From Octopus bimaculoides (taxonomy: Eukaryota): DNA of 64,000 nucleotides. The stretch is from the NCBI RefSeq assembly GCF_001194135.2, contig NC_068997.1, forward strand, positions 55,458,530 to 55,522,529, read 5' to 3'. The position numbers and the translations under genes were made by a program. Of this stretch, positions 14,052-46,077 are shown one piece after another (the stretch's first letter is position 1; every line of letters starts with the position of its first letter). The notes beneath the pieces were generated by a model, which saw nothing but the letters and a program-made list of their open reading frames with translations, did not search any database and had not been told where the DNA came from.

Positions 14052-14109
14052 TTAATAAAATAGATGGAATAAAAGATTTTATTTAGTATGAACACCTAGT
14101 GATAATAAA

Positions 14110-14600
14110 ATGATAATACCGACAACCAGAATACTGAACAGAAACAATCCCTCCAGCGCTCGATGTACACAAACCACCAAAATCAAACCGTTATGCTCAT
14201 GCAGAGATAGATCCAATTGCCCTTTGGATAACCAATGTATGACTAAAAATGTTGTATACAAGTGCACTATAAACACTCAAAGAGTCCTCTACGTATATAT
14301 TGGGGCATCAACTGATTTTTTCAAAAATCGATACCGCAGCCACATCCCCAGCTTTAAAATATCCTTAAATGACATGTAACATCACTGGCCATTTTATCTG
14401 GTGGCTTAAGGAAGTGAAGACAAAATACAATCTTACATGGTCCATACTTAGACACATGAATCCCTACAACACTATATCCCGCAAATGCCAATTATGCTCC
14501 AAGGAATCACTCTTGATAATGTTGACAAGGGAGCGCATTATAAATAAATTCACTGAACAATTACTCAAATGCCTACATGCAGCCCAACACACATTTACAT
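14110..14600 (+). mobile_element. Penelope-like element (probably Neptune-type) C-terminal GIY-YIG endonuclease fragment, frameshifted near 14370
   Basis: ORFs 14110-14379 and 14369 onward give CSCRDRSNCPLDNQCMTKNVVYKC...YVYIGASTDFFKNRYRSH...FIWWLKE...WSIL...Y....[12 protein letters not shown]...[12 protein letters not shown]. This is a Cys-rich linker followed by GIY-YIG motifs typical of PLEs. Confidence 0.85.
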
Positions 14601-14604
14601 ACTA

Positions 14605-14968
14605 CAATCCAGATCATATATATATACATATATATACATATATATATACATATATATATATAGACATATATATATATACATATATATATACATATATACA
14701 TACATACATATATATATACATATATACATACATATATACATATATACATACCTACATATATATATACATATATACATACATACATATATACATATATACA
14801 TACATACATATATATATACATATATACATACATACATATATACATATATACATACATACATATATACATATNNNNNNNNNNNNNNNNNNNNNNNNNNNNN
14901 NNNNNNNNNNNNNNNNNNNNNNNNNNNNNNNNNNNNNNNNNNNNNNATATATATATATATATATATAA
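14605..14968. repeat. Compound (TA)n/(TATACA)n microsatellite spanning an N gap (14872-14946)
   Basis: Direct reading. Confidence 0.95.
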
Positions 14969-32177: not shown

Positions 32178-32187
32178 NNNNNNNNNN

Positions 32188-35000: not shown

Positions 35001-37984
35001 TTATTCACAGTACACACAAATGCATGCATACTGATACACACACACATTGATTCGAATGCATAGGAAAGCTGGAGATAATGAAATGAGATAAGGGAGTTAG
35101 TTAATAATGGAGACTATTTTTTCGTAAGGACATGAAGAAAAGTTTAACAGAAACTACAGCATCAAGTGAGNNNNNNNNNNGGGGGGGGGGGAAGTGAAAC
35201 TGAAAGAGATGAGGCAGATATGAAAGGGGAAATGAAAATGTAAGGGAGGCTAGTGTCAAAATGGAAAAAGATGATAAAATGTAGTAATTAAAATGAGAGA
35301 AGAAGAGGGTTATATGAAACAGATAGAAAGATGGGGTGGTGATGTGAGTTGAAGCTGATGAGAATTAAGGCAAGTAATGAATAGGAGGGAAAAAAAAGCA
35401 AATGTGAGTTAAAGGAAATATATAAAAACATGGAGAGGAAATAAAATATGTGTGTGAGAGAAATATTAACAGGAGATAATGAAAATAAATAGAGAAAAGC
35501 AATGAAAAAAAGATGAATAAAAGCCTCTGAAATAAAATAAAATAAGACAGAGATGTGAGAAGGAAAAGATAGTTCACTTTTTTTTAAATTTGTAACAAAG
35601 TTCTTTTTAAAAGTGAATATTGATTTCAAGCTGTAAAGCTACTCTAGATGTGGATTTTATTCCTGTTTTTCTAATGAGACAAATATATTTATAAAATATC
35701 ATTGATCTGTTTTTAGAGAACAAGCTGTAATATAATCTAAATTTCAGTTTTGATTTCTCTCTCAGTGAATATCATAAATTATAGTGCTCTGCAAATATCA
35801 GATTTTACTCAACAGTTTAATCTTGTCTGGGGTGGATGAGAGAAGGGAGGAAAGGCTGGAGAGATAGTGACAAGGAGACAGACAATCAAACAAATGGTTG
35901 CAAAGAAACTGAACTTCACAAAACCTACTATAAATATTAATTTTGTAGTGATCTTAGTTTTACCAAAAGTATATCATGATCTCAAGTAAATCAGAGAGCA
36001 ACCAGCTGCTATTTATTCCTGTCAAAAATTTCACACTGGTCTTCCCAGAGATGGATGATACGAGTTATGCTTTGTAAAAGTTTCTTTAATCAATAAAACT
36101 TTTCAGTAAAAATTGGTCGACTGCCAAATACAAACTCAGAAACTCTTTTGTTTTTCCATAAATGTATGAGAATGGATCAAGGGAGAGGGTAGAAGCGAAG
36201 GTAGAATAATGGGGGGAGAAGGAAGTAAGAAAATTTGAAATTTCCTGTACAGAACAAAATATATTGAATGCTGCTGTTAAGCAGATTAATGCTAACACCT
36301 TTGATAATTTTGATTTTGAGATTTATCTTTTGGAACGTTTTTTTCTTTTTTCACAGAAAATAATTCTGTAATATAATTACAAATGTCTGATGATAGGATG
36401 AGAGGAACAGAAGACAAATAACAGCATGATATCCAGTAAAGTGCAAAATGAAAAAAAAAAAATTAAAAATCAAATCAAGAAATTTTAAAAATATAAATTT
36501 GTTGATCATCTCGTATATATATAAAAAAAAAATTGGCATGTATGCAGAACAACAATCAGTAAAAGAAATTGAGATAAATACAGGATAGTCTGAAGTATTA
36601 CAACATTTCTTTGGAGTTGCACATCAACACTGTAATTACAATAGTTGGCAACGAAAATTTTTAGCAATTTAATTAGGAGCAAATGTAATAATTCTTTGAT
36701 ATAATATTTAAATAAATACATTACAGATCTGTTTTGTTTCTGCATTTATTAGACATGTCACATTAAATTTGAAAATTTCATTTATTTAAATGTGTCAATA
36801 AAAATTAAAATCAAATGCTGTTATTTTTTGAAATTATTTTTCTTTCTTTTAAAATGTTGTTAAGTTACTTTAAACCAATTAGTTCAGCCCATCTGAAGTG
36901 TTACTAATCCTGTTTTATATATTTTCCTTTTGGAAACAACATTTTGTCTTCAAATTACAATAATTTATGACTACAATCAACAGAAGAATGTTTGAAAGGT
37001 AAAAATAAAAGAGAAAAAAATGGAATCACTTATATTTCATTTTTCATTCTATAATCTCAAATGGGTATTGAACCCACAAAGAATTTGAGCAATTGACAAA
37101 CCATTAATAAATTAAACATTTTTTAGCACTTTTTAACTTTGCTTCTAAATGCAGTTTATATATATAACAAAAAATTATTATTAAAAGGCTGTTGTAAAAA
37201 CAAATCAAAAATCTAACCATTTTAGATATGCAGAATGCAAACTATTCTGAATAAATGGTAAAATATTTTGCTAACTAGGGCTCAGTTTTTCTCTCAAATG
37301 AAGAAAACCTTTTTTTCCAAATAGAAAACAAAGTTAGTTAATATTCTTAATTTAAAAAAAAAAATCAATTTATATAGTGCGTTGTTTTTTCCTTGTTGTA
37401 TATTTAAAGATTGTTATAAACACATTAATGTATGGGAAAGAAAAATAAGTAAAAATAAATAAATTCAGCTTTTTGAAGATTCAACAATTAAAATTATACT
37501 TCAATAACTCTATGAGTCATTTAGGTGGATGGTACGCTGGTTTCCTCAAATATATAAACAAACATCACTCATTTTCATTAACTCAATCATCCTGAGGTTG
37601 CTCTCAGCCACATAACACAAACTTCCATAATCTCGAAACTTCCATCAAAATTCTATGTTAATTTATGCACCAAACACCAGCATTATAAATATTTTACTGG
37701 ATTCTTTATTTCCTAAATATGTTTAAAGAAGGACAGTGAACTTCAACACAAATATGATAGCAAAACAGTTAAGTAATAGTAAGTAGAAATGATTGACAGC
37801 CAAAAGATTTTATAAACATGTGTAAATTGTTTTGGCAGTAGATGTGTGTGTGTGTGCAGATTTGTTAGAATAACTTCAAGAAATAAAACTCAAAACATGA
37901 ACTTATAATATATAAGGAAAATTAAAGAATAGTAATAATGAAAAAGTATATATATATATATATATATATATATACCCATGTTAC

Positions 37985-38072
37985 TTGCAGTTTTATTCAG
38001 AATTGATTTTTAATGTAATCTGTTATTCCACTTACCTGTAGGAAAGAAAGAAAAGGAAGAAGCATTAGTTAC
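37985..38072 (-). other. Candidate recursive splice site (zero-length exon / ratchet point) with downstream cryptic RS-exon
   Basis: Minus strand: gTAACTAATg cttcttccttttctttctttcct aCAG|GTAAGT. Branch A at about -30, 23 uninterrupted pyrimidines, no intervening AG, and a consensus donor reconstituted at the junction 38036/38035. Confidence 0.6.
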
Positions 38073-38657
38073 AGCAAATGTTATATTTAAGTTATACAAA
38101 AATGAGATAACTTATTAATTGAACATCTTGTATGAGGAAATCTGTTTCCAACAAATATTAATCTTACGTTCTTAAGGTGCTTGGAGACAATTTCAAAGGA
38201 AATGTATTCCAGCCAACTTAGAAATAGTTAACAATTGACAGTAAAGAATTTTATGTTAATACATTATGTAAGAAGGAGAGAAAGAGAGGGAGAGAAAGAG
38301 CAGAGGAGAGAAAGCTATTAATGCAATTCATAAAGATTATACCATACCAGATAATACTAAAAAATATTATCAAAAAGGAAATTCAATTAACAGTTAAAAT
38401 TAATTTTTCAAAATTTATACAACCAACAAGCCTCTACTTTTATAAAATGGCATTCTTTCATTTTGAAAAACATTCTTCACACATGCAACCACAAAATCTA
38501 ATAAAGTCTGAACCTTCAGATGTTAGAATTCAATTCTTGCTGTTTTCTTTATATCATCTCAGTTGCAGCAGCAGATCTACAACCAAAGGCACTTTATCCA
38601 TGACCATCCTGTTTTAAAAGCCTATTTCATTTAACCCCTTGATACAAACTTTCAGCT

Positions 38658-38888
38658 TTAACCCCTTAGCATTCAGATTATTCTGTCAAATGTTGTGCTA
38701 ATTAATTCAAATTGTTTTGAATTAATCAGGCATCATCTCGTAGCTTCAAGAATGTTATGATGTGATTGTTTATTTTTAGAAGTGCATTGTAGTGAAGGTG
38801 TGAGAGACTGGATCTGACTGGTTTGAACAAAAAAAAACAGGTAGAATATTTAGGCAGGACATGGTCAGTTTGAATGTTAAAGGGTTAA
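38658..38888. mobile_element. piggyBac-type MITE flanked by TTAA
   Basis: TTAA(38658-38661)-ccccttagcattca...tgaatgttaaaggg-TTAA(38885-38888); second copy at 18187-18411. Confidence 0.8.
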
Positions 38889-40701
38889 AGAGATCTAAAT
38901 TCTAACCTCTCACCAAAACCACATGTTAATTTAAGTTACAAACAGTTAATAATAAAGTTATTTTATTAAGTTATTCACTATTTTCAAAATTAATTGAGAT
39001 AAAGCCATGAATATGTCCTTCCTTTTTTAAGATTGCAGAGGGAGATTTGATTGCTATTTTTTGGCAGGTCAATCAGGTATATATATATGAACTCTTTCAT
39101 TGATGTGTGCAATTCTTTTGTATTCAAAATGGCTATATATTTCACGATTTGGATAATTAAATCCTCTATGCTGGCAATATAAATAAAGTGCATACATTTA
39201 TGAAGTTGCAAAGAAAACGTACAATAGTTTCATATTGAAGATATCAAATATATTTTCATGACTTCACAGGAAATAAAAGAACCACCGTTTCCTTTAAGTA
39301 TGGAGCTCATAAGAATGACTTTAAAATAGTGGGTCAGCATGCAATAATTTATGATTTCATTAATTAAGTAAATTCATATTAAATAGCTTTTATAAGATTA
39401 CATACAAATTGTACTAATTGTTTCACTTACTCCATTAACCTAATTACTATTTAAAATTGAGAAGTTTTTTTAGCCTTATTACACACTAAATAGATAGAGG
39501 TAAATAGAACTCTAAATGAGATATATATTTTATATAAATCAGTGTTTCACAGTTATAAGTGTGTGTGTGCATAATTACTAGAATGTCAATAAAATAGGAA
39601 TCCTAAATAAATATATAGAGTATCATGTGCACACATTTAATATCACTATGAAAGTAGTTCCATAAGGGCGTCTTTGGCAGCATGGACAAGGACAGAAGTA
39701 ACTTGTTACTGCTTCTTAACACTTCATCAAGACTGTCTTTCTTTCCAAAAATGGGTCAAGCACAGCTCATTCGCATGATACTACATGGTAGGTGACACAT
39801 TAAGAAATACTTTAGTAGTTACAGAACATGGTTTGAATAACTCCATATATTTGTTTTCCGCACATACTTTCATACATTTCTGCCACTTATTTGAGCCAGT
39901 TTGTCCATGTCAGGTTCTGTCAAATGTCTTCAACAATGACCATTGAAACTGCTTGTAAACAGGCCTTCAAAAGTGATATATCTGTGTGATTCAAAATTAG
40001 TGACTTCTAAACATTTTAAATCTTTAAATATTAAATGAAAATATTAAAAGCATGTTCTCTTTTCTAAAAAAATGGGATTTGATGATATTTGAAATTAAAA
40101 TTTTATGATTAAGAATATATTTTACATATATTATTTAACATTTGAAGTGTTTTATAATTCCTAAATTTGTAATTTTAGGAAAGTACTTCCTGCAATATTT
40201 TTTTGCACACTGATGATCATAGCTCTGAATATTTATAAACTAATGATGAATATATATACATATATAAATTAAAAAAGGTCAGCTATTCTAACATGACACT
40301 GCCTATACCGAGAAGTAGCTGCATAAAGAAAAACCTCAGCTACACATAAGTGAAGAATATTGCTTTGCCAGGGTTTCACATGTATTTTCAAAACTTATCT
40401 GACAGGGCATCAGAGAAGATAAACTTCCACAACAGTTAAGATAAAAACCTGTTTCCAGAAATTCCAACATCTTATAGCTTAACTGACTGACATCAGTCTA
40501 GCTCCCCTTGCTTTAAACTACCATCAGTTAAAACTCCCTAAGAAAACAGTAGAACCTTAATTATCTCTCATGACTTACTCATGACCACCAAAGATAATAT
40601 TCTTCATGATTATATATANNNNNNNNNNNNNNNNNNNNNNNNNNNNNNNNNNNNNNNNNNNNNNNNNNNNNNNNNNNNNNNNNNNNNNNNNNNNNNNNNN
40701 N

Positions 40702-41489: not shown

Positions 41490-42700
41490 CATCATCATCC
41501 TCAGTTTCATTGTCATCATTATCATCATCATCATCATCAAGTGTTCATTTCCCATGCTGGCGCACATTGGGCAGTTTGACAGTAACTCATATACTGGATA
41601 GCTGCACCAGACTCCAGTCTGGTTTGGCTTGGTTTCTAAGGTTGGATGACCCTTCCTAAATCCAGTCACACCACAGAGTATATCAAGGGTCTTCTACATA
41701 TCACTGACACTGGTCATGACTAATTTCAATTAGCTCCATGTGTCTTCTCAAGCACTGCAAATCACCAATTATCTAAGTCACTTGCCATTGCCTCCATGGG
41801 ACTCAAACATTTGAAGATCATATTTCACCACCTCATTTCACATTTTCTTGAGTCAACCTCTATCACAGGTTCCCTCCCCAAATAGAAATCAGTACTTCTT
41901 TCCGCTGTTGTCCTCATCCAAACACATCCCATGGCCATACCAGTGCAGTCTTCTCTCTTGCACACTACATCTGATGCCCCTTACACTCACTTTTTCTCTT
42001 AAGACACTTACGCTCTGTCATACTTGCACACTGACATTGTGCATCCAGTGGAACATACTAGTTGCATTACTTTCAAACCCCTGCATGGCCCTTTACAGTT
42101 ATAGCCTATGTTTCACTGCCATGTACCATGGCTGTTCGCATGCAGGTATCATACAATCTGCCTTTCCCTCTGAGGGAGAGAAACCCTTTGTTATCAACAA
42201 AAGTAGTAACAGTGTGAACTTCACCCAGCCTGTTCTTATTCTAGCAGCTATGCTTTCAGAGCATCCACCTCCACTGCTGACTTGGTTACTGAGGTAACAG
42301 AAACTATCAACTACTTCTACGTATCGCCCTGGGCATTAGACAAAGTCTATTCTTTTGTACACCCTTAGTGTTTATTGTACCTGTACACCTGCTACACACA
42401 AAGACTACTTTCTCTGTAAACCTTTCCCTGATACTACTGCACCTCTAATGTGTCCATAGCTTGCTCTGGGTACATCTTATGGAGTTTCTACCAACATCTT
42501 TTCTACATAATGAGCAGGGCTATTGCCCTGATGGAATTTGTGATTTGTCTGTTTTGCTACTAACTAAGACTTTGGTCTTTGTTAATTTAACTCTTTGATT
42601 CTAGACCTTGCTTCTACACCTGAAACTTCTTCTCTAGTTCTGGTAATGATTCAGCTATAAGAACATGGTCAACAGCCCTTCTTAAATTTCTCTGTTATGG
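41490..42700 (-). mobile_element. 5'-truncated RTE-clade LINE (RT C-terminal half, 3' UTR, (GAT)n tail), degenerate
   Basis: Minus-strand remnants: LIAESLPELEKKFQV*KQGLESK..TKTKVLVS downstream of a decayed YADD; (Y)LSNQVSSGGGCSESIAARIRTGWVKF; SLRGKGRLYDTCMRTAMVHGSET*. These match RTE FKYLG..I..RI..AW..F and K.RLY....LYGSE.W motifs. Confidence 0.85.
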
Positions 42701-43149: not shown

Positions 43150-46077
43150 CTATATGTTTGCATTAACAGATTATCGATTGCTAATTTTAGTATATTGCAT
43201 ATTAATTAATGATTTATAATCCAAGAATATAATGCATAGATTGTTGATTATATGTTTCAACTGCAAGGCACCAATTATTTATACAAACTGAATATGAAAA
43301 ATGAAGAATAGTATTATCTGTTATTCAGAAATCTTCATGACTTGTCTCAGATCAAATTTGTACAGTAATTATAAATAAAGTAATCTTAATACAAAAATTA
43401 TATATATGTATTCCATGACTTAAATATCTCGAGAGCTTTTGGGAAACCAAATAATGACAAAAGCTTTAAAAAAGAATACAAAAGAAGTATATTTCCTTTA
43501 AACACTATGATGGAATGCTTCCGAATTATTTCTCTATCCTCATGTTTTTGCTAACATAAGAGGATTGGTTGAAAGAAGATATTAACAGAAGTATTGCAAA
43601 GAATATACAACAGTCCCTCACTTCCTCTCTTGAAGAGCTGTTTCAACAGGGTTCCATCCACATCTATGGATTTAGCAGAACCACTTGAAATCCTAAGAAA
43701 TTGCTTCACTAACATTATAAACTTTAAAAACAGATTCTTTCATATGCTTGAATCTGCTTCTTAAGGTTTAAAACATCTCATCAATTACAAAAGAATTTGA
43801 AGGTGACTTTCTAGGAAAGGAATAAATGAGAAATACTATGAGAAAACAAAAAGAGAAAAACACAATTATAATTAAATTGAAATTAACTTTGAACAGGAGG
43901 CTAATCAATGTTAATAAAGAATCTCAATTTTTCCAAATAATTTTACCTAATGCAAAAATAAAAGGAAATTAAAAGATATTTTGAGGAAGAATCTAGACTC
44001 TGGGAAAAAAAAAGAAAAACAAAAACAAACAAACAGAACTGCCAAAGTCATAATGCTGAAGAATATTCCTACCCTGATAAGGCATGTGTGTGTTTACTTC
44101 TATTTTATCAGAAGCTGTGGCCATGCTGGGGCACCTCAACTGGAATGATTGTTAGTTTATTTCATTTCATTTCATTTCCATGTACTTCTTGCTTTTAGTC
44201 TTTCACTGTATATACCCCCCCCCCACNNNNNNNNNNCCCCCCCCCCACACACACACACATATACATATGCCTTTTTCAGTAGGAATTGAAGAAAAGAATG
44301 GAATCTTTGAAGATGATCAATCCAAAAAGTGGTGACGTTTGATAAGGTTATTTTACTGACTGACAGGGATCCATACCCCAACATGCTACAGTCTTTTCTT
44401 CATATGTGCAATTTTCCTTCTTTGGCATTTCTTTTGCTATATCAATCACTTCTGCTCCTCTGAACAAGTTCTCTGCATACTTTCTTCATCAATCTCTTTT
44501 CCTCCCAACATGCTTCTAAGACCCAATACAAAACCCTTTGCACAAACCTATCCTTTCCAGAGCTGCGATTTTTCTGGACTTCTCTCCACACCCAATCTTT
44601 TTCGACAGATACCAACCTACAAGATGCCCATTAGCTTTATTCGTGGGATTCAGAAGGAACAGGCTGAATAGTGTGCAGAGCCTTGTAGGGGAGAGAAGGG
44701 AATGAAGTTCCATGATAGCCAACACCTGTAGGCATAGCACTATCCTTATTCCTTCTTGGACTAATTAAAAAAATCCTACACACAAACACACATACTCTCT
44801 CTATTTCTCTCACACACACAAATATTCATCCACTATCTTACGCACACAAAGAAGAACTGAATGATAAATAGTGAAGAGAAAGACAGACATTGAATCTTTA
44901 AAATTATTCAGCATCATAAACTAAAAAGAAAAAGATAATTGAATGCCAGATTGTAATAAATTACAAACAGTATAATTTTTCAATGTAAATCTTTTTATTA
45001 ATATAAGATTACTATGTGTCTTTCAATGGCAAGATGTTTATAGATTAGTGGCAGAGAGCACTTCCTTTTATGAAATTCTATCACTAGACATCTGGTCTCT
45101 ATAGTAAATCCCTTTATAATGAAGCAAATATAGAATTCTTCAACAATACTTAAATAAATTACTTTTATAACTTTAATATTACACACATACATGTACACCC
45201 ACACACAGAGTATATCTTCTAATGGAAATTATTGATAGAATATTATCAAGAAAGTATTCTTTGTTTAAATACGTTTATCTATCTACATTTTATATATAAG
45301 TCTTCAATAACAAAATAGTTTATGATATCTTAAGAAATACTTATAAGGTTAAATTGCTGGGCTACAAAGTCACATGGTCAAGCTGTTCATACCATGCTCC
45401 AGACATTAAGTTCAGATCCTTCTGCCAGCAGCACCTTATCTTGGATTGTGGTTCAGAGGGTACACCATAGAACATAATGTCTCTGGGATCCTTTTGGTTT
45501 TAGTTCAGAAACTCTTTGGTTCTACCAAAAATAAAACAATGGCTATGATGATATTCTATATCTTTATTTCTCAATACAACTCAGTGAGGTAGGTACCTAA
45601 TCTGTCTTTTATTGAGACAAATAATGGAATTGCTAGTGGACCATTATTGCAGCAGAATGGTTTATACTTTGGTATTACACAGCCTCTTTAACAGAAATAT
45701 TTAGTTCTCAATGAGAGGGAACTGCTAAATAGCTGCTCACTTTGCTAGAAATTGCAGCTGAATCTCTCATGATTGACAGAAGAACTCTGATTGTTCCTAT
45801 TTGATACATGAAGACATTGGTAACGATAAATTGTTTCTACTTCAGGCATGGGGTCTTTGGAAGAAATTAGTCAATTCCATGAACCCCAGCGCCTGATAGA
45901 AATTTATTCATCCAGGAGGATGGAAGAATAACACCCTGGGACATATCGCCACAGGAATATTATGGAAAATTGGCATGTATTCCTGTCAAAAAAGCTTGTA
46001 GGAAATAAATGTCTTCTAATATCTGTATTGATTCCTGCATTACAGTAAAAGAAATGGAGATGGGAAAAACAAGCAAT

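What the first reader, a model, noticed from the sequence alone, without database searches (positions are those of the whole stretch)
37985..38072. Textbook recursive splice site (ratchet point) with a poison cryptic exon, suggesting recursive splicing in a cephalopod
Seen on minus: branch motif TAACTAAT (38071-38064, branch A about -30), 23 consecutive pyrimidines (38062-38040), no competing AG, then ACAG immediately followed by GTAAGT. A second donor (caa|GTAACA at 37984) would define a 51-nt exon with stop codons in all three frames (TGA at codon 13, TAA at once, TAA at codon 8). The site lies in unique, non-microsatellite sequence, and I see no coding exon nearby. Known: Drosophila ratchet points and vertebrate RS sites have this AG|GT design in very long introns, often of neuronal genes, and RS-exons commonly carry premature stops. 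Inference: the window is inside a giant intron of a minus-strand gene that is spliced in steps. I am not aware of recursive splicing being characterised in molluscs.
Basis: partly seen in the sequence, partly recalled or inferred. Interest (0 to 1): 0.85.

Follow-up and report, generated by a model that had tools for sequence, protein, structure and literature searches.

The report
Unverified recursive-splice-site motif in noncoding DNA
The window really does hold a near-perfect back-to-back splice acceptor and donor, the design of a recursive splice site, but no available tool could show that it is transcribed, spliced or conserved, and a genome this size should hold hundreds of such motifs by chance, so it is a candidate and not a discovery.

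Summary
The sequence observation is correct to the base on the minus strand. It reads TAACTAAT (38071-38064), then 23 pyrimidines (38062-40), then ACAG|GTAAGT (junction 38036|38035). A second GT at 37984 gives a 51-nt segment with stops in all three frames.

Among the 341 AGGT sites in the window this one is a clear outlier (20/20 pyrimidines, 6/6 donor). An empirical null gives about 0.007 such sites per 64 kb. That scales to about 100-700 in a 2.7-Gb genome.

The "poison RS-exon" part is not above chance:
- The second donor GTAACA scores 2.8 bits, in the top 17% of all GTs.
- An equal or better donor 30-80 nt away occurs at 32% of random positions.
- Stops in all three frames occur in 25% of random 51-mers.

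The gene context could not be established:
- About 12,000 aa of ORFs gave no protein hit.
- Pfam, Rfam and the tRNA scan found nothing.
- There is no strand asymmetry and no related DNA in any collection I could search.

So a minus-strand giant intron, junction use and conservation all remain untested. I found no paper on recursive splicing in molluscs.

My verdict is that this is most likely (about 0.6) an unselected composite motif built on a short CT-rich low-complexity tract. A real recursive site keeps about 0.3. Interest is low to moderate. If real, it would be a new member of a known kind.

The parts
38064..38071 (-). Branch-point-like TAACTAAT (CTAAT core, candidate branch A at 38065, 29 nt upstream of the AG)
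   Evidence: A CTRAY motif falls in the -18..-42 window at 8% of random positions here, and YTNAY at 43%. Fly ratchet-point branch points peak at -30.
38040..38062 (-). 23-nt uninterrupted polypyrimidine tract, (CTTT)n-like low complexity
   Evidence: The part 38043-38061 scores as a weak tandem repeat. The minus strand has 9 pyrimidine runs of at least 20 nt and the plus strand has 5.
38036..38039 (-). ACAG acceptor, with no AG between the branch motif and this AG
   Evidence: It is the only acceptor-like site in the window with 20/20 Y in positions -5..-24. Position -6 is C, not the T seen in 99.5% of fly ratchet points.
38030..38035 (-). GTAAGT donor directly abutting the AG; CAG|GTAAGT is the full U1-complementary 9-mer
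   Evidence: 13.0 bits. Only 2 of 6745 GTs in the window score as high.
37985..38035 (-). Hypothetical 51-nt cryptic RS-exon (27% G+C, contains AATAAA at 37997-37992)
   Evidence: One search shows stops in all three frames. That is true of 25% of random 51-mers from this window, so it is not informative.
37979..37984 (-). Proposed second donor caa|GTAACA (weak); an alternative tgg|GTATAT lies at 37975
   Evidence: 2.8 bits (top 17% of all GTs) and 1.5 bits. An equal or better donor 30-80 nt downstream occurs at 32% of random positions.

Best explanation
The feature is a real sequence motif but most likely an unselected one. A short CT-rich low-complexity tract happens to end in CAG and to be followed by GTAAGT, inside a 64-kb stretch of repeat-rich DNA in which no coding sequence could be detected.

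It has no demonstrated function. Whether it lies in an intron, and on which strand that intron is read, is unknown.

Mechanistically (inference only): if the minus strand were transcribed as part of a long intron, U2AF/U2 and U1 would probably recognise so strong a site. Splicing to it would then be undone by re-splicing from the regenerated GTAAGT. Even a chance site in a sense intron could therefore behave as a neutral recursive site. Nothing here shows that this happens.
For: - Chance rate. The empirical estimate is 0.007 per window, so about 100-700 equally good sites are expected in a genome of 2-3 Gb.
- Published background. Ratchet-point-like motifs occur at about 0.07-0.12 per 100 kb on the antisense strands of large introns in 13 animals, and in human and fly intergenic DNA.
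- Vertebrate-sized genomes. Such motifs are barely enriched on the sense strand (ratio 0.9-1.5). Only 19 recursive sites were found in mouse brain.
- The tract itself is low complexity. CT-rich tracts are common locally and across the window.
- The accessory 'RS-exon' features are at chance level.
- No sign of a gene on either strand: about 12,000 aa of ORFs gave no homolog; there were no Pfam, Rfam or tRNA hits; AT skew is 0.016 +/- 0.011 and GC skew is -0.008 +/- 0.018; AWTAAA counts are 189 against 190.
- There is no second ratchet-like site on the minus strand in 64 kb.
Against: - The site is the extreme outlier of 341 AGGT sites.
- Adding the CTAAT branch motif at -29 lowers the chance expectation about 12-fold.
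- All five invertebrates tested by Shepard et al. (four insects and a sea urchin) show 4- to more than 20-fold sense-strand enrichment of such motifs in large introns. If cephalopods follow that pattern, a site this good would more likely be real than not.
- A 64-kb exon-free window is what a giant intron would look like.
- The null results on gene context are absences of evidence. Short exons and untranslated exons were not searchable.
Confidence: 0.6

Rival explanations
1. It is a genuine recursive splice site (ratchet point) in a long intron of a minus-strand gene. The upstream exon is first spliced to the AG at 38036. The regenerated 5' splice site (exon end + GTAAGT) is then used to remove the rest of the intron. 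A short cryptic exon may be defined transiently and always skipped.
For: - Full match to the AG|GTAAGT design, with a 23-nt pyrimidine tract, no competing AG and a CTAAT about -29.
- Fly ratchet points have branch points peaking at -30 and cryptic exons of about 50 nt with a weaker donor.
- The mouse RS sites are likewise enriched for AGGTAAGT and a pyrimidine tract.
- Ratchet motifs are enriched 4-22x on the sense strand of large introns in insects and a sea urchin.
- The window is exon-free over 64 kb. Fly recursive introns are 11-133 kb long.
Against: - There is no evidence of minus-strand transcription, of an intron, of junctions or of conservation.
- About 100-700 chance sites are expected per genome.
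- The downstream donor needed to define the cryptic exon is poor: 2.8 bits, with C at +5.
- Position -6 is C, whereas 196/197 fly sites have TT at -5/-6.
- Recursive sites are rare in vertebrate-sized genomes.
Confidence: 0.3
2. It is the boundary of an ordinary unannotated exon. This could be the acceptor of an expressed short exon that begins GTAAGT (a cassette, poison or terminal exon using the AATAAA at 37997-37992). It could also be the donor of an untranslated exon that ends ...CCTACAG.
For: - In mouse, 46 of 84 junction-supported intronic AGGT candidates proved to be unannotated exons, against 19 recursive sites.
- CAG|GTAAGT is by itself a perfect donor.
- An AATAAA lies 38 nt into the segment.
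Against: - There is no open frame and no protein homolog on either side.
- The segment is 27% G+C and is followed by a (TA)14 array.
- Downstream donors are weak.
- An exon ending in 23 pyrimidines would be unusual.
Confidence: 0.07
3. The motif is carried by a transposable element or is part of a U1 snRNA-like sequence on the plus strand (ACTTACCTG).
For: - The plus strand reads ACTTACCTG, identical to the 5' end of U1 snRNA (from my own knowledge).
- The window is rich in SINE-like repeats, and a MITE-like element lies 600 nt away.
Against: - No Rfam family reaches its threshold anywhere in the window.
- The match to U1 stops after the 9 nt that any perfect donor complements.
- No other copy of 37600-38500 exists in the window.
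Confidence: 0.03

Closest known systems
Drosophila intronic ratchet points (zero-nucleotide-exon recursive splicing: Hatton 1998, Burnette 2005, Duff 2015, Joseph 2018, Pai 2018)
   Same: - Juxtaposed acceptor and donor around AG|GT, a prominent pyrimidine tract and a GTAAGT donor.
- Branch point about 30 nt upstream.
- A GT about 50 nt downstream that is weaker than the ratchet donor.
- Out-of-frame, stop-rich cryptic segment.
   Different: - Position -6 is C, whereas 99.5% of fly sites have TT at -5/-6.
- The downstream donor is much poorer than a usable fly RS-exon donor.
- The defining evidence (junction reads, saw-tooth, lariats, conservation, position in a sense intron longer than 10 kb) is absent here.
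Vertebrate RS-sites with RS-exons (Sibley 2015, Kelly 2015, Blazquez 2018; mouse brain survey PMC8797253)
   Same: - AGGTAAGT core complementary to U1, and a strong pyrimidine tract.
- The idea of a stop-containing RS-exon whose inclusion would trigger decay.
   Different: - Vertebrate sites are conserved, and sit in introns longer than 51 kb of genes longer than about 300 kb, mostly first introns. None of this could be checked here.
- They are rare: 19-20 in mouse brain.
Background ratchet-point-like motifs on antisense strands and in intergenic DNA (Shepard, McCreary and Fedorov 2009)
   Same: A composite acceptor/donor consensus match in noncoding DNA with no evidence of use. It occurs at a measurable chance rate in every genome examined.
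   Different: This match is much stronger than the 80% score threshold used there.
Poison exons (NMD-coupled cassette exons)
   Same: A short segment with stops in every frame, flanked by AG and GT.
   Different: - Poison exons are usually conserved and have competent donors.
- Here the stops and the donor are at chance level.
- No host reading frame is known.

Membership tests
Recursive splice site / ratchet point | [quoted passage not shown] | tested here: met
   23 Y + ACAG|GTAAGT. It is the top site of 341 AGGT sites, and the donor scores 13.0 bits.
Recursive splice site / ratchet point | Branch point 21-36 nt upstream with an AG-free interval | tested here: inconclusive
   A CTAAT motif with its A at -29 and no intervening AG is present. 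A motif is not a mapped branch point, and CTRAY occurs there by chance at 8% of positions.
Recursive splice site / ratchet point | Lies in a long intron (more than 10 kb in flies, more than 50 kb in mouse) on the sense strand of a transcribed gene | tested here: inconclusive
   No exon or homolog was found in 64 kb. No RNA genes were found. There is no strand asymmetry. This fits a giant intron and intergenic DNA equally well, and the strand is unknown.
Recursive splice site / ratchet point | Splice-junction reads from the upstream exon to the site, saw-tooth coverage, and lariats to and from the site | not testable with these tools
   No RNA-seq data are accessible.
Recursive splice site / ratchet point | Conservation of the AG|GT core above the flanking intron in related species | not testable with these tools
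   No cephalopod genomes are in the DNA collections. An exact 21-mer scan of the metagenome contigs found nothing.
Recursive splice site / ratchet point (Drosophila type) | TT at positions -5 and -6 (196/197 fly sites) | tested here: not met
   Here -5 is T and -6 is C. This is a fly-specific preference, and its relevance to molluscs is unknown.
Recursive splice site with cryptic RS-exon | A competent downstream donor about 30-80 nt away that defines the cryptic exon and is weaker than the ratchet donor | tested here: inconclusive
   GTAACA at +51 (2.8 bits) and GTATAT at +60 (1.5 bits) are indeed weaker than the ratchet donor. But 32% of random positions do as well.
Poison exon | An exon included in some transcripts that introduces a premature stop in a known reading frame; usually conserved | tested here: inconclusive
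   Stops in all three frames are present, but 25% of random 51-mers have them too. The host frame, inclusion and conservation are unknown.
Protein-coding exon | An open frame with homologs | tested here: not met

The most novel reading that the evidence does not exclude
The site is a constitutively used ratchet point in a giant intron of an octopod (probably neuronal) gene. That would be the first documented case of recursive splicing in a mollusc or lophotrochozoan. It would imply that stepwise intron removal at AG|GTAAGT sites is ancestral to bilaterians and is retained in a large, repeat-rich invertebrate genome.
Probability: 0.25. Interest if true: 0.5.

Novelty: not a real feature. Interest (0 to 1): 0.3.

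Why it matters
If the site were shown to be used, it would extend recursive splicing from insects and vertebrates to molluscs. It would also give an entry point for asking how cephalopods process their very long neuronal introns.

That extension would be welcome but not very surprising. Ratchet-type motifs are already known to be enriched in the large introns of insects and a sea urchin (Shepard et al. 2009), and the spliceosome is conserved.

As it stands the finding is one motif match. Its value is as a concrete, cheap test locus, and as a prompt for a genome-wide comparison of sense and antisense strands in cephalopods. I chose 'not a real feature' because a functional element is unproven and chance is the most likely origin. 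The sequence motif itself is real, and if functional it would be a new member of a known kind.

Tried and rejected
1. **Fetching the orthologous or identical locus through proteins.** An exact look-up of the nearest ORF (38321-38617) found nothing on record. A concatenated query of all ORFs of at least 35 aa within +/-2.3 kb found no hit.
2. **Exon hunt over the whole window.** I ran two concatenated queries of about 4,900 aa each. They covered ORFs of at least 40-45 aa that passed a low-complexity filter, down to 35% G+C. Neither gave a hit.
3. **Pfam.** The ten most protein-like ORFs gave no family. These included an RT-tail-like and a Cys-rich GIY-YIG-like reading that I had recognised by eye.
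4. **RNA genes.** Rfam and the tRNA scan, run to find an intronic RNA gene that would give the strand, found none.
5. **Strand asymmetry as a proxy for transcription direction.** Skews, poly(A) signals and donor-like hexamers showed no significant difference. SINE-like repeats occur in both orientations.
6. **Repeat-borne motif.** Rejected, because there is no other copy in the window.
7. **U1 snRNA gene on the plus strand.** Rejected.
8. **Metagenome scan for the site.** No match.
9. **Literature.** I found no paper on recursive splicing in cephalopods or molluscs. The single co-occurrence is in a reference list. Sibley 2015 is not held in the library.

Full report
**Observation.** I read 37800-38300 on the minus strand.
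- ...gctgTAACTAATgc, with TAACTAAT at 38071-38064.
- An uninterrupted run of 23 pyrimidines (38062-38040).
- ACAG (38039-38036), immediately followed by GTAAGT (38035-38030).
- Further on, caa|GTAACA with the G at 37984.

The coordinates and the sequence claims are therefore confirmed.

**How unusual is it?**
- AGGTAAGT occurs five times in the window against about two expected.
- The pattern Y8NYAGGTRAGT occurs once against 0.01 in dinucleotide-preserving shuffles.
- Of the six AGGTRAGT sites on both strands, only this one has a pyrimidine tract.
- Of all 341 AGGT sites it is alone with 20/20 pyrimidines and a 6/6 donor. The runner-up has 16/20 and 4/6.
- CAG|GTAAGT scores 13.0 bits with a generic metazoan donor matrix, equalled by only 2 of 6745 GTs.

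Shuffles erase the CT-rich low-complexity tracts that this genome is full of, so I also made an empirical estimate. The window holds 10 other acceptor-like sites with at least 18/20 pyrimidines, a YAG and no AG. GTRAGT follows an AG in 5 of 7199 other cases. The product is 0.007 per 64 kb (95% CI 0.002-0.016). That is roughly 290 (95-680) sites in a 2.7-Gb genome, counting both strands. The motif is rare for a single window but expected in the hundreds per genome.

**The accessory features.**
- The branch-like CTAAT is a genuine plus. CTRAY falls in the right interval at only 8% of random positions, although the looser YTNAY does so at 43%.
- The 'poison cryptic exon' is not a plus. GTAACA scores 2.8 bits, in the top 17% of all GTs. 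The alternative GTATAT at +60 scores 1.5 bits.
- A donor at least as good as GTAACA, 30-80 nt downstream, is found at 32% of random positions. Stops in all three frames are found in 25% of random 51-mers of this A+T-rich window.
- The tract itself (38043-38061) scores as a weak two-copy tandem repeat.
- A second CT-rich array lies 240 nt upstream at 38274-38314, and a (TA)14 array begins 10 nt after the second donor.
- 'Unique' is right: there is no other copy in the window. 'Non-microsatellite' is only partly right.

**Surroundings and gene context.** The window is 28-38% G+C throughout. It is rich in microsatellites and in SINE-like dispersed repeats in both orientations, and it has five assembly gaps.

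I looked for any exon that would give a gene and a strand:
- An exact look-up of the nearest ORF found nothing.
- Three searches of the 5.8-billion-protein collection used concatenated ORFs. One took every ORF of at least 35 aa within +/-2.3 kb of the site. Two took ORFs of at least 40-45 aa from the whole window that passed a low-complexity filter, down to 35% G+C. Together they covered about 12,000 aa and returned no hit. An annotated exon identical to the query would have scored far above threshold.
- Pfam found nothing in the ten most protein-like ORFs.
- Rfam and the tRNA scan found nothing.

Strand-asymmetry proxies are flat. AT skew is 0.016 +/- 0.011 and GC skew is -0.008 +/- 0.018 over 16 bins. 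AWTAAA counts are 189 against 190, and GTRAGT counts are 25 against 32. The window is therefore noncoding as far as can be seen, which fits a giant intron and intergenic DNA equally well. Nothing indicates that the minus strand is the sense strand.

No cephalopod DNA or RNA is reachable with the tools, and an exact scan of the metagenome contigs for the core 21-mer found nothing. That the organism is a cephalopod is itself untested. The SINE-like repeats resemble, from my memory only, those abundant in octopus genomes.

**Comparison with what is known.** Fly ratchet points are juxtaposed acceptor and donor sites with a prominent pyrimidine tract. Their branch points peak at -30. They sit in introns of 11-133 kb, are strongly conserved, and 196 of 197 have TT at -5/-6. 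They depend on a short (about 50 nt), poorly conserved, usually out-of-frame cryptic exon. Its donor is weaker than the ratchet donor but is fully usable when the ratchet donor is mutated.

The candidate matches the core, the branch distance and the geometry. It has C at -6 and only a poor downstream donor.

Base rates differ greatly between lineages. Shepard et al. counted ratchet-type motifs at about 0.07-0.12 per 100 kb on antisense strands in 13 animals. Sense-strand enrichment in large introns was 4- to more than 20-fold in four insects and a sea urchin, but only 0.9-1.5-fold in eight vertebrates. In mouse brain only 19 recursive sites were found, and 46 of 84 junction-supported AGGT candidates were simply unannotated exons. 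A lungfish study likewise found no increased reliance on recursive splicing in a giant genome, and it lists flies, mice and humans as the species where the process is established. Large animal genomes are about half intron and half intergenic. No mollusc has been examined in any paper I could find.

**Weighing.** The posterior that this site is real is T/(T+N). N is the number of chance sites of this quality, roughly 300, or roughly 25 if the CTAAT is also required. T is the number of true sites of this quality in the genome.

If cephalopods resemble insects or the sea urchin (T in the high hundreds or more), the site is more likely real than not. If they resemble mouse (T in the tens), it is very likely chance. 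I give the two regimes about equal weight, discount for the poor cryptic-exon donor, and allow for the post hoc choice of supporting features.

That leaves:
- about 0.6 for an unselected motif;
- about 0.3 for a used recursive site, which includes a chance-born site that happens to lie in a sense intron and is used neutrally;
- under 0.1 for an ordinary unannotated exon boundary;
- a few percent for a repeat-borne or U1-related origin, which the data argue against.

These numbers are inference, not measurement.

**Verdict.** The interpretation cannot be decided with the evidence available, and its 'poison exon' component is not supported beyond chance. If real, the site would be a new member of a known kind in a new phylum, which is useful but not very surprising. 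The decisive work is simple: place the locus on the annotation, look for exon-to-38035 junctions, a saw-tooth and lariats in total RNA-seq, check conservation in other octopods, and measure sense/antisense enrichment of the motif genome-wide.

Noticed in passing
window 38656-38890: A MITE-like element of about 235 bp, bounded by 20-nt terminal inverted repeats (CTTTAACCCCTTAGCATTCA / TGAATGTTAAAGGGTTAAAG, 90% complementary). Only these two arms occur in the window. The TTAA-CCC ends recall piggyBac-type termini (from memory, untested). It lies 600-850 nt upstream of the candidate site on the minus strand.
   Followed up: partly
window ~1.2k, 10.1k, 12.9k, 13.9k, 15.0k, 16.1k, 18.4k, 19.9-20.2k, 27.2-27.6k, 34.6k, 41.4k, 46.1-46.5k, 50.1k, 54.0k, 58.2k, 62.9-63.3k: Two or three families of SINE-like dispersed repeats, 65-90% identical, in both orientations. 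No tRNA-like head was detected by ARAGORN or Rfam. They resemble, from memory only, abundant octopus SINEs. None lies within 3 kb of the site.
   Followed up: partly
window 42102-42335 (-) and ~14100-14570 (+): ORF fragments that by eye look like the C-terminal part of a LINE reverse transcriptase and like a Cys-rich/GIY-YIG-type transposon protein. Neither gave a Pfam or protein-database hit, so this stays an unverified impression.
   Followed up: partly
window 38274-38314 and 37947-37974: A CT-rich tandem array (AGGAGAGAAAGAGAG x2.7 on the plus strand) lies 240 nt upstream of the site. A perfect (TA)14 array lies 10 nt after the proposed second donor. The site therefore sits between low-complexity tracts.
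   Followed up: yes
window 14872-14946, 32178-32187, 35171-35180, 40619-40701, 44227-44236: Runs of N (10-83 nt) inside or next to microsatellites. They are assembly gaps, which indicates a draft short-read assembly. The sequence around 38035 is gap-free.
   Followed up: no
window 43999, 43835, 46954, 58493, 62357, 35826, 7939 (minus); 18018, 24588, 31438 (plus): Other strong acceptor-like sites (at least 18/20 pyrimidines + YAG). There are 8 on the minus strand, including the candidate at 38035, and 3 on the plus strand. None apart from the candidate is followed by a donor or by an open frame with homologs. The minus-strand excess parallels its slightly higher T content and is not significant.
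   Followed up: partly
window 15890 (+), 22995, 49259, 63250 (-), 48275 (+): Five further AGGTRAGT octamers without any pyrimidine tract (7-11 of 20). They look like ordinary pseudo-donors.
   Followed up: yes
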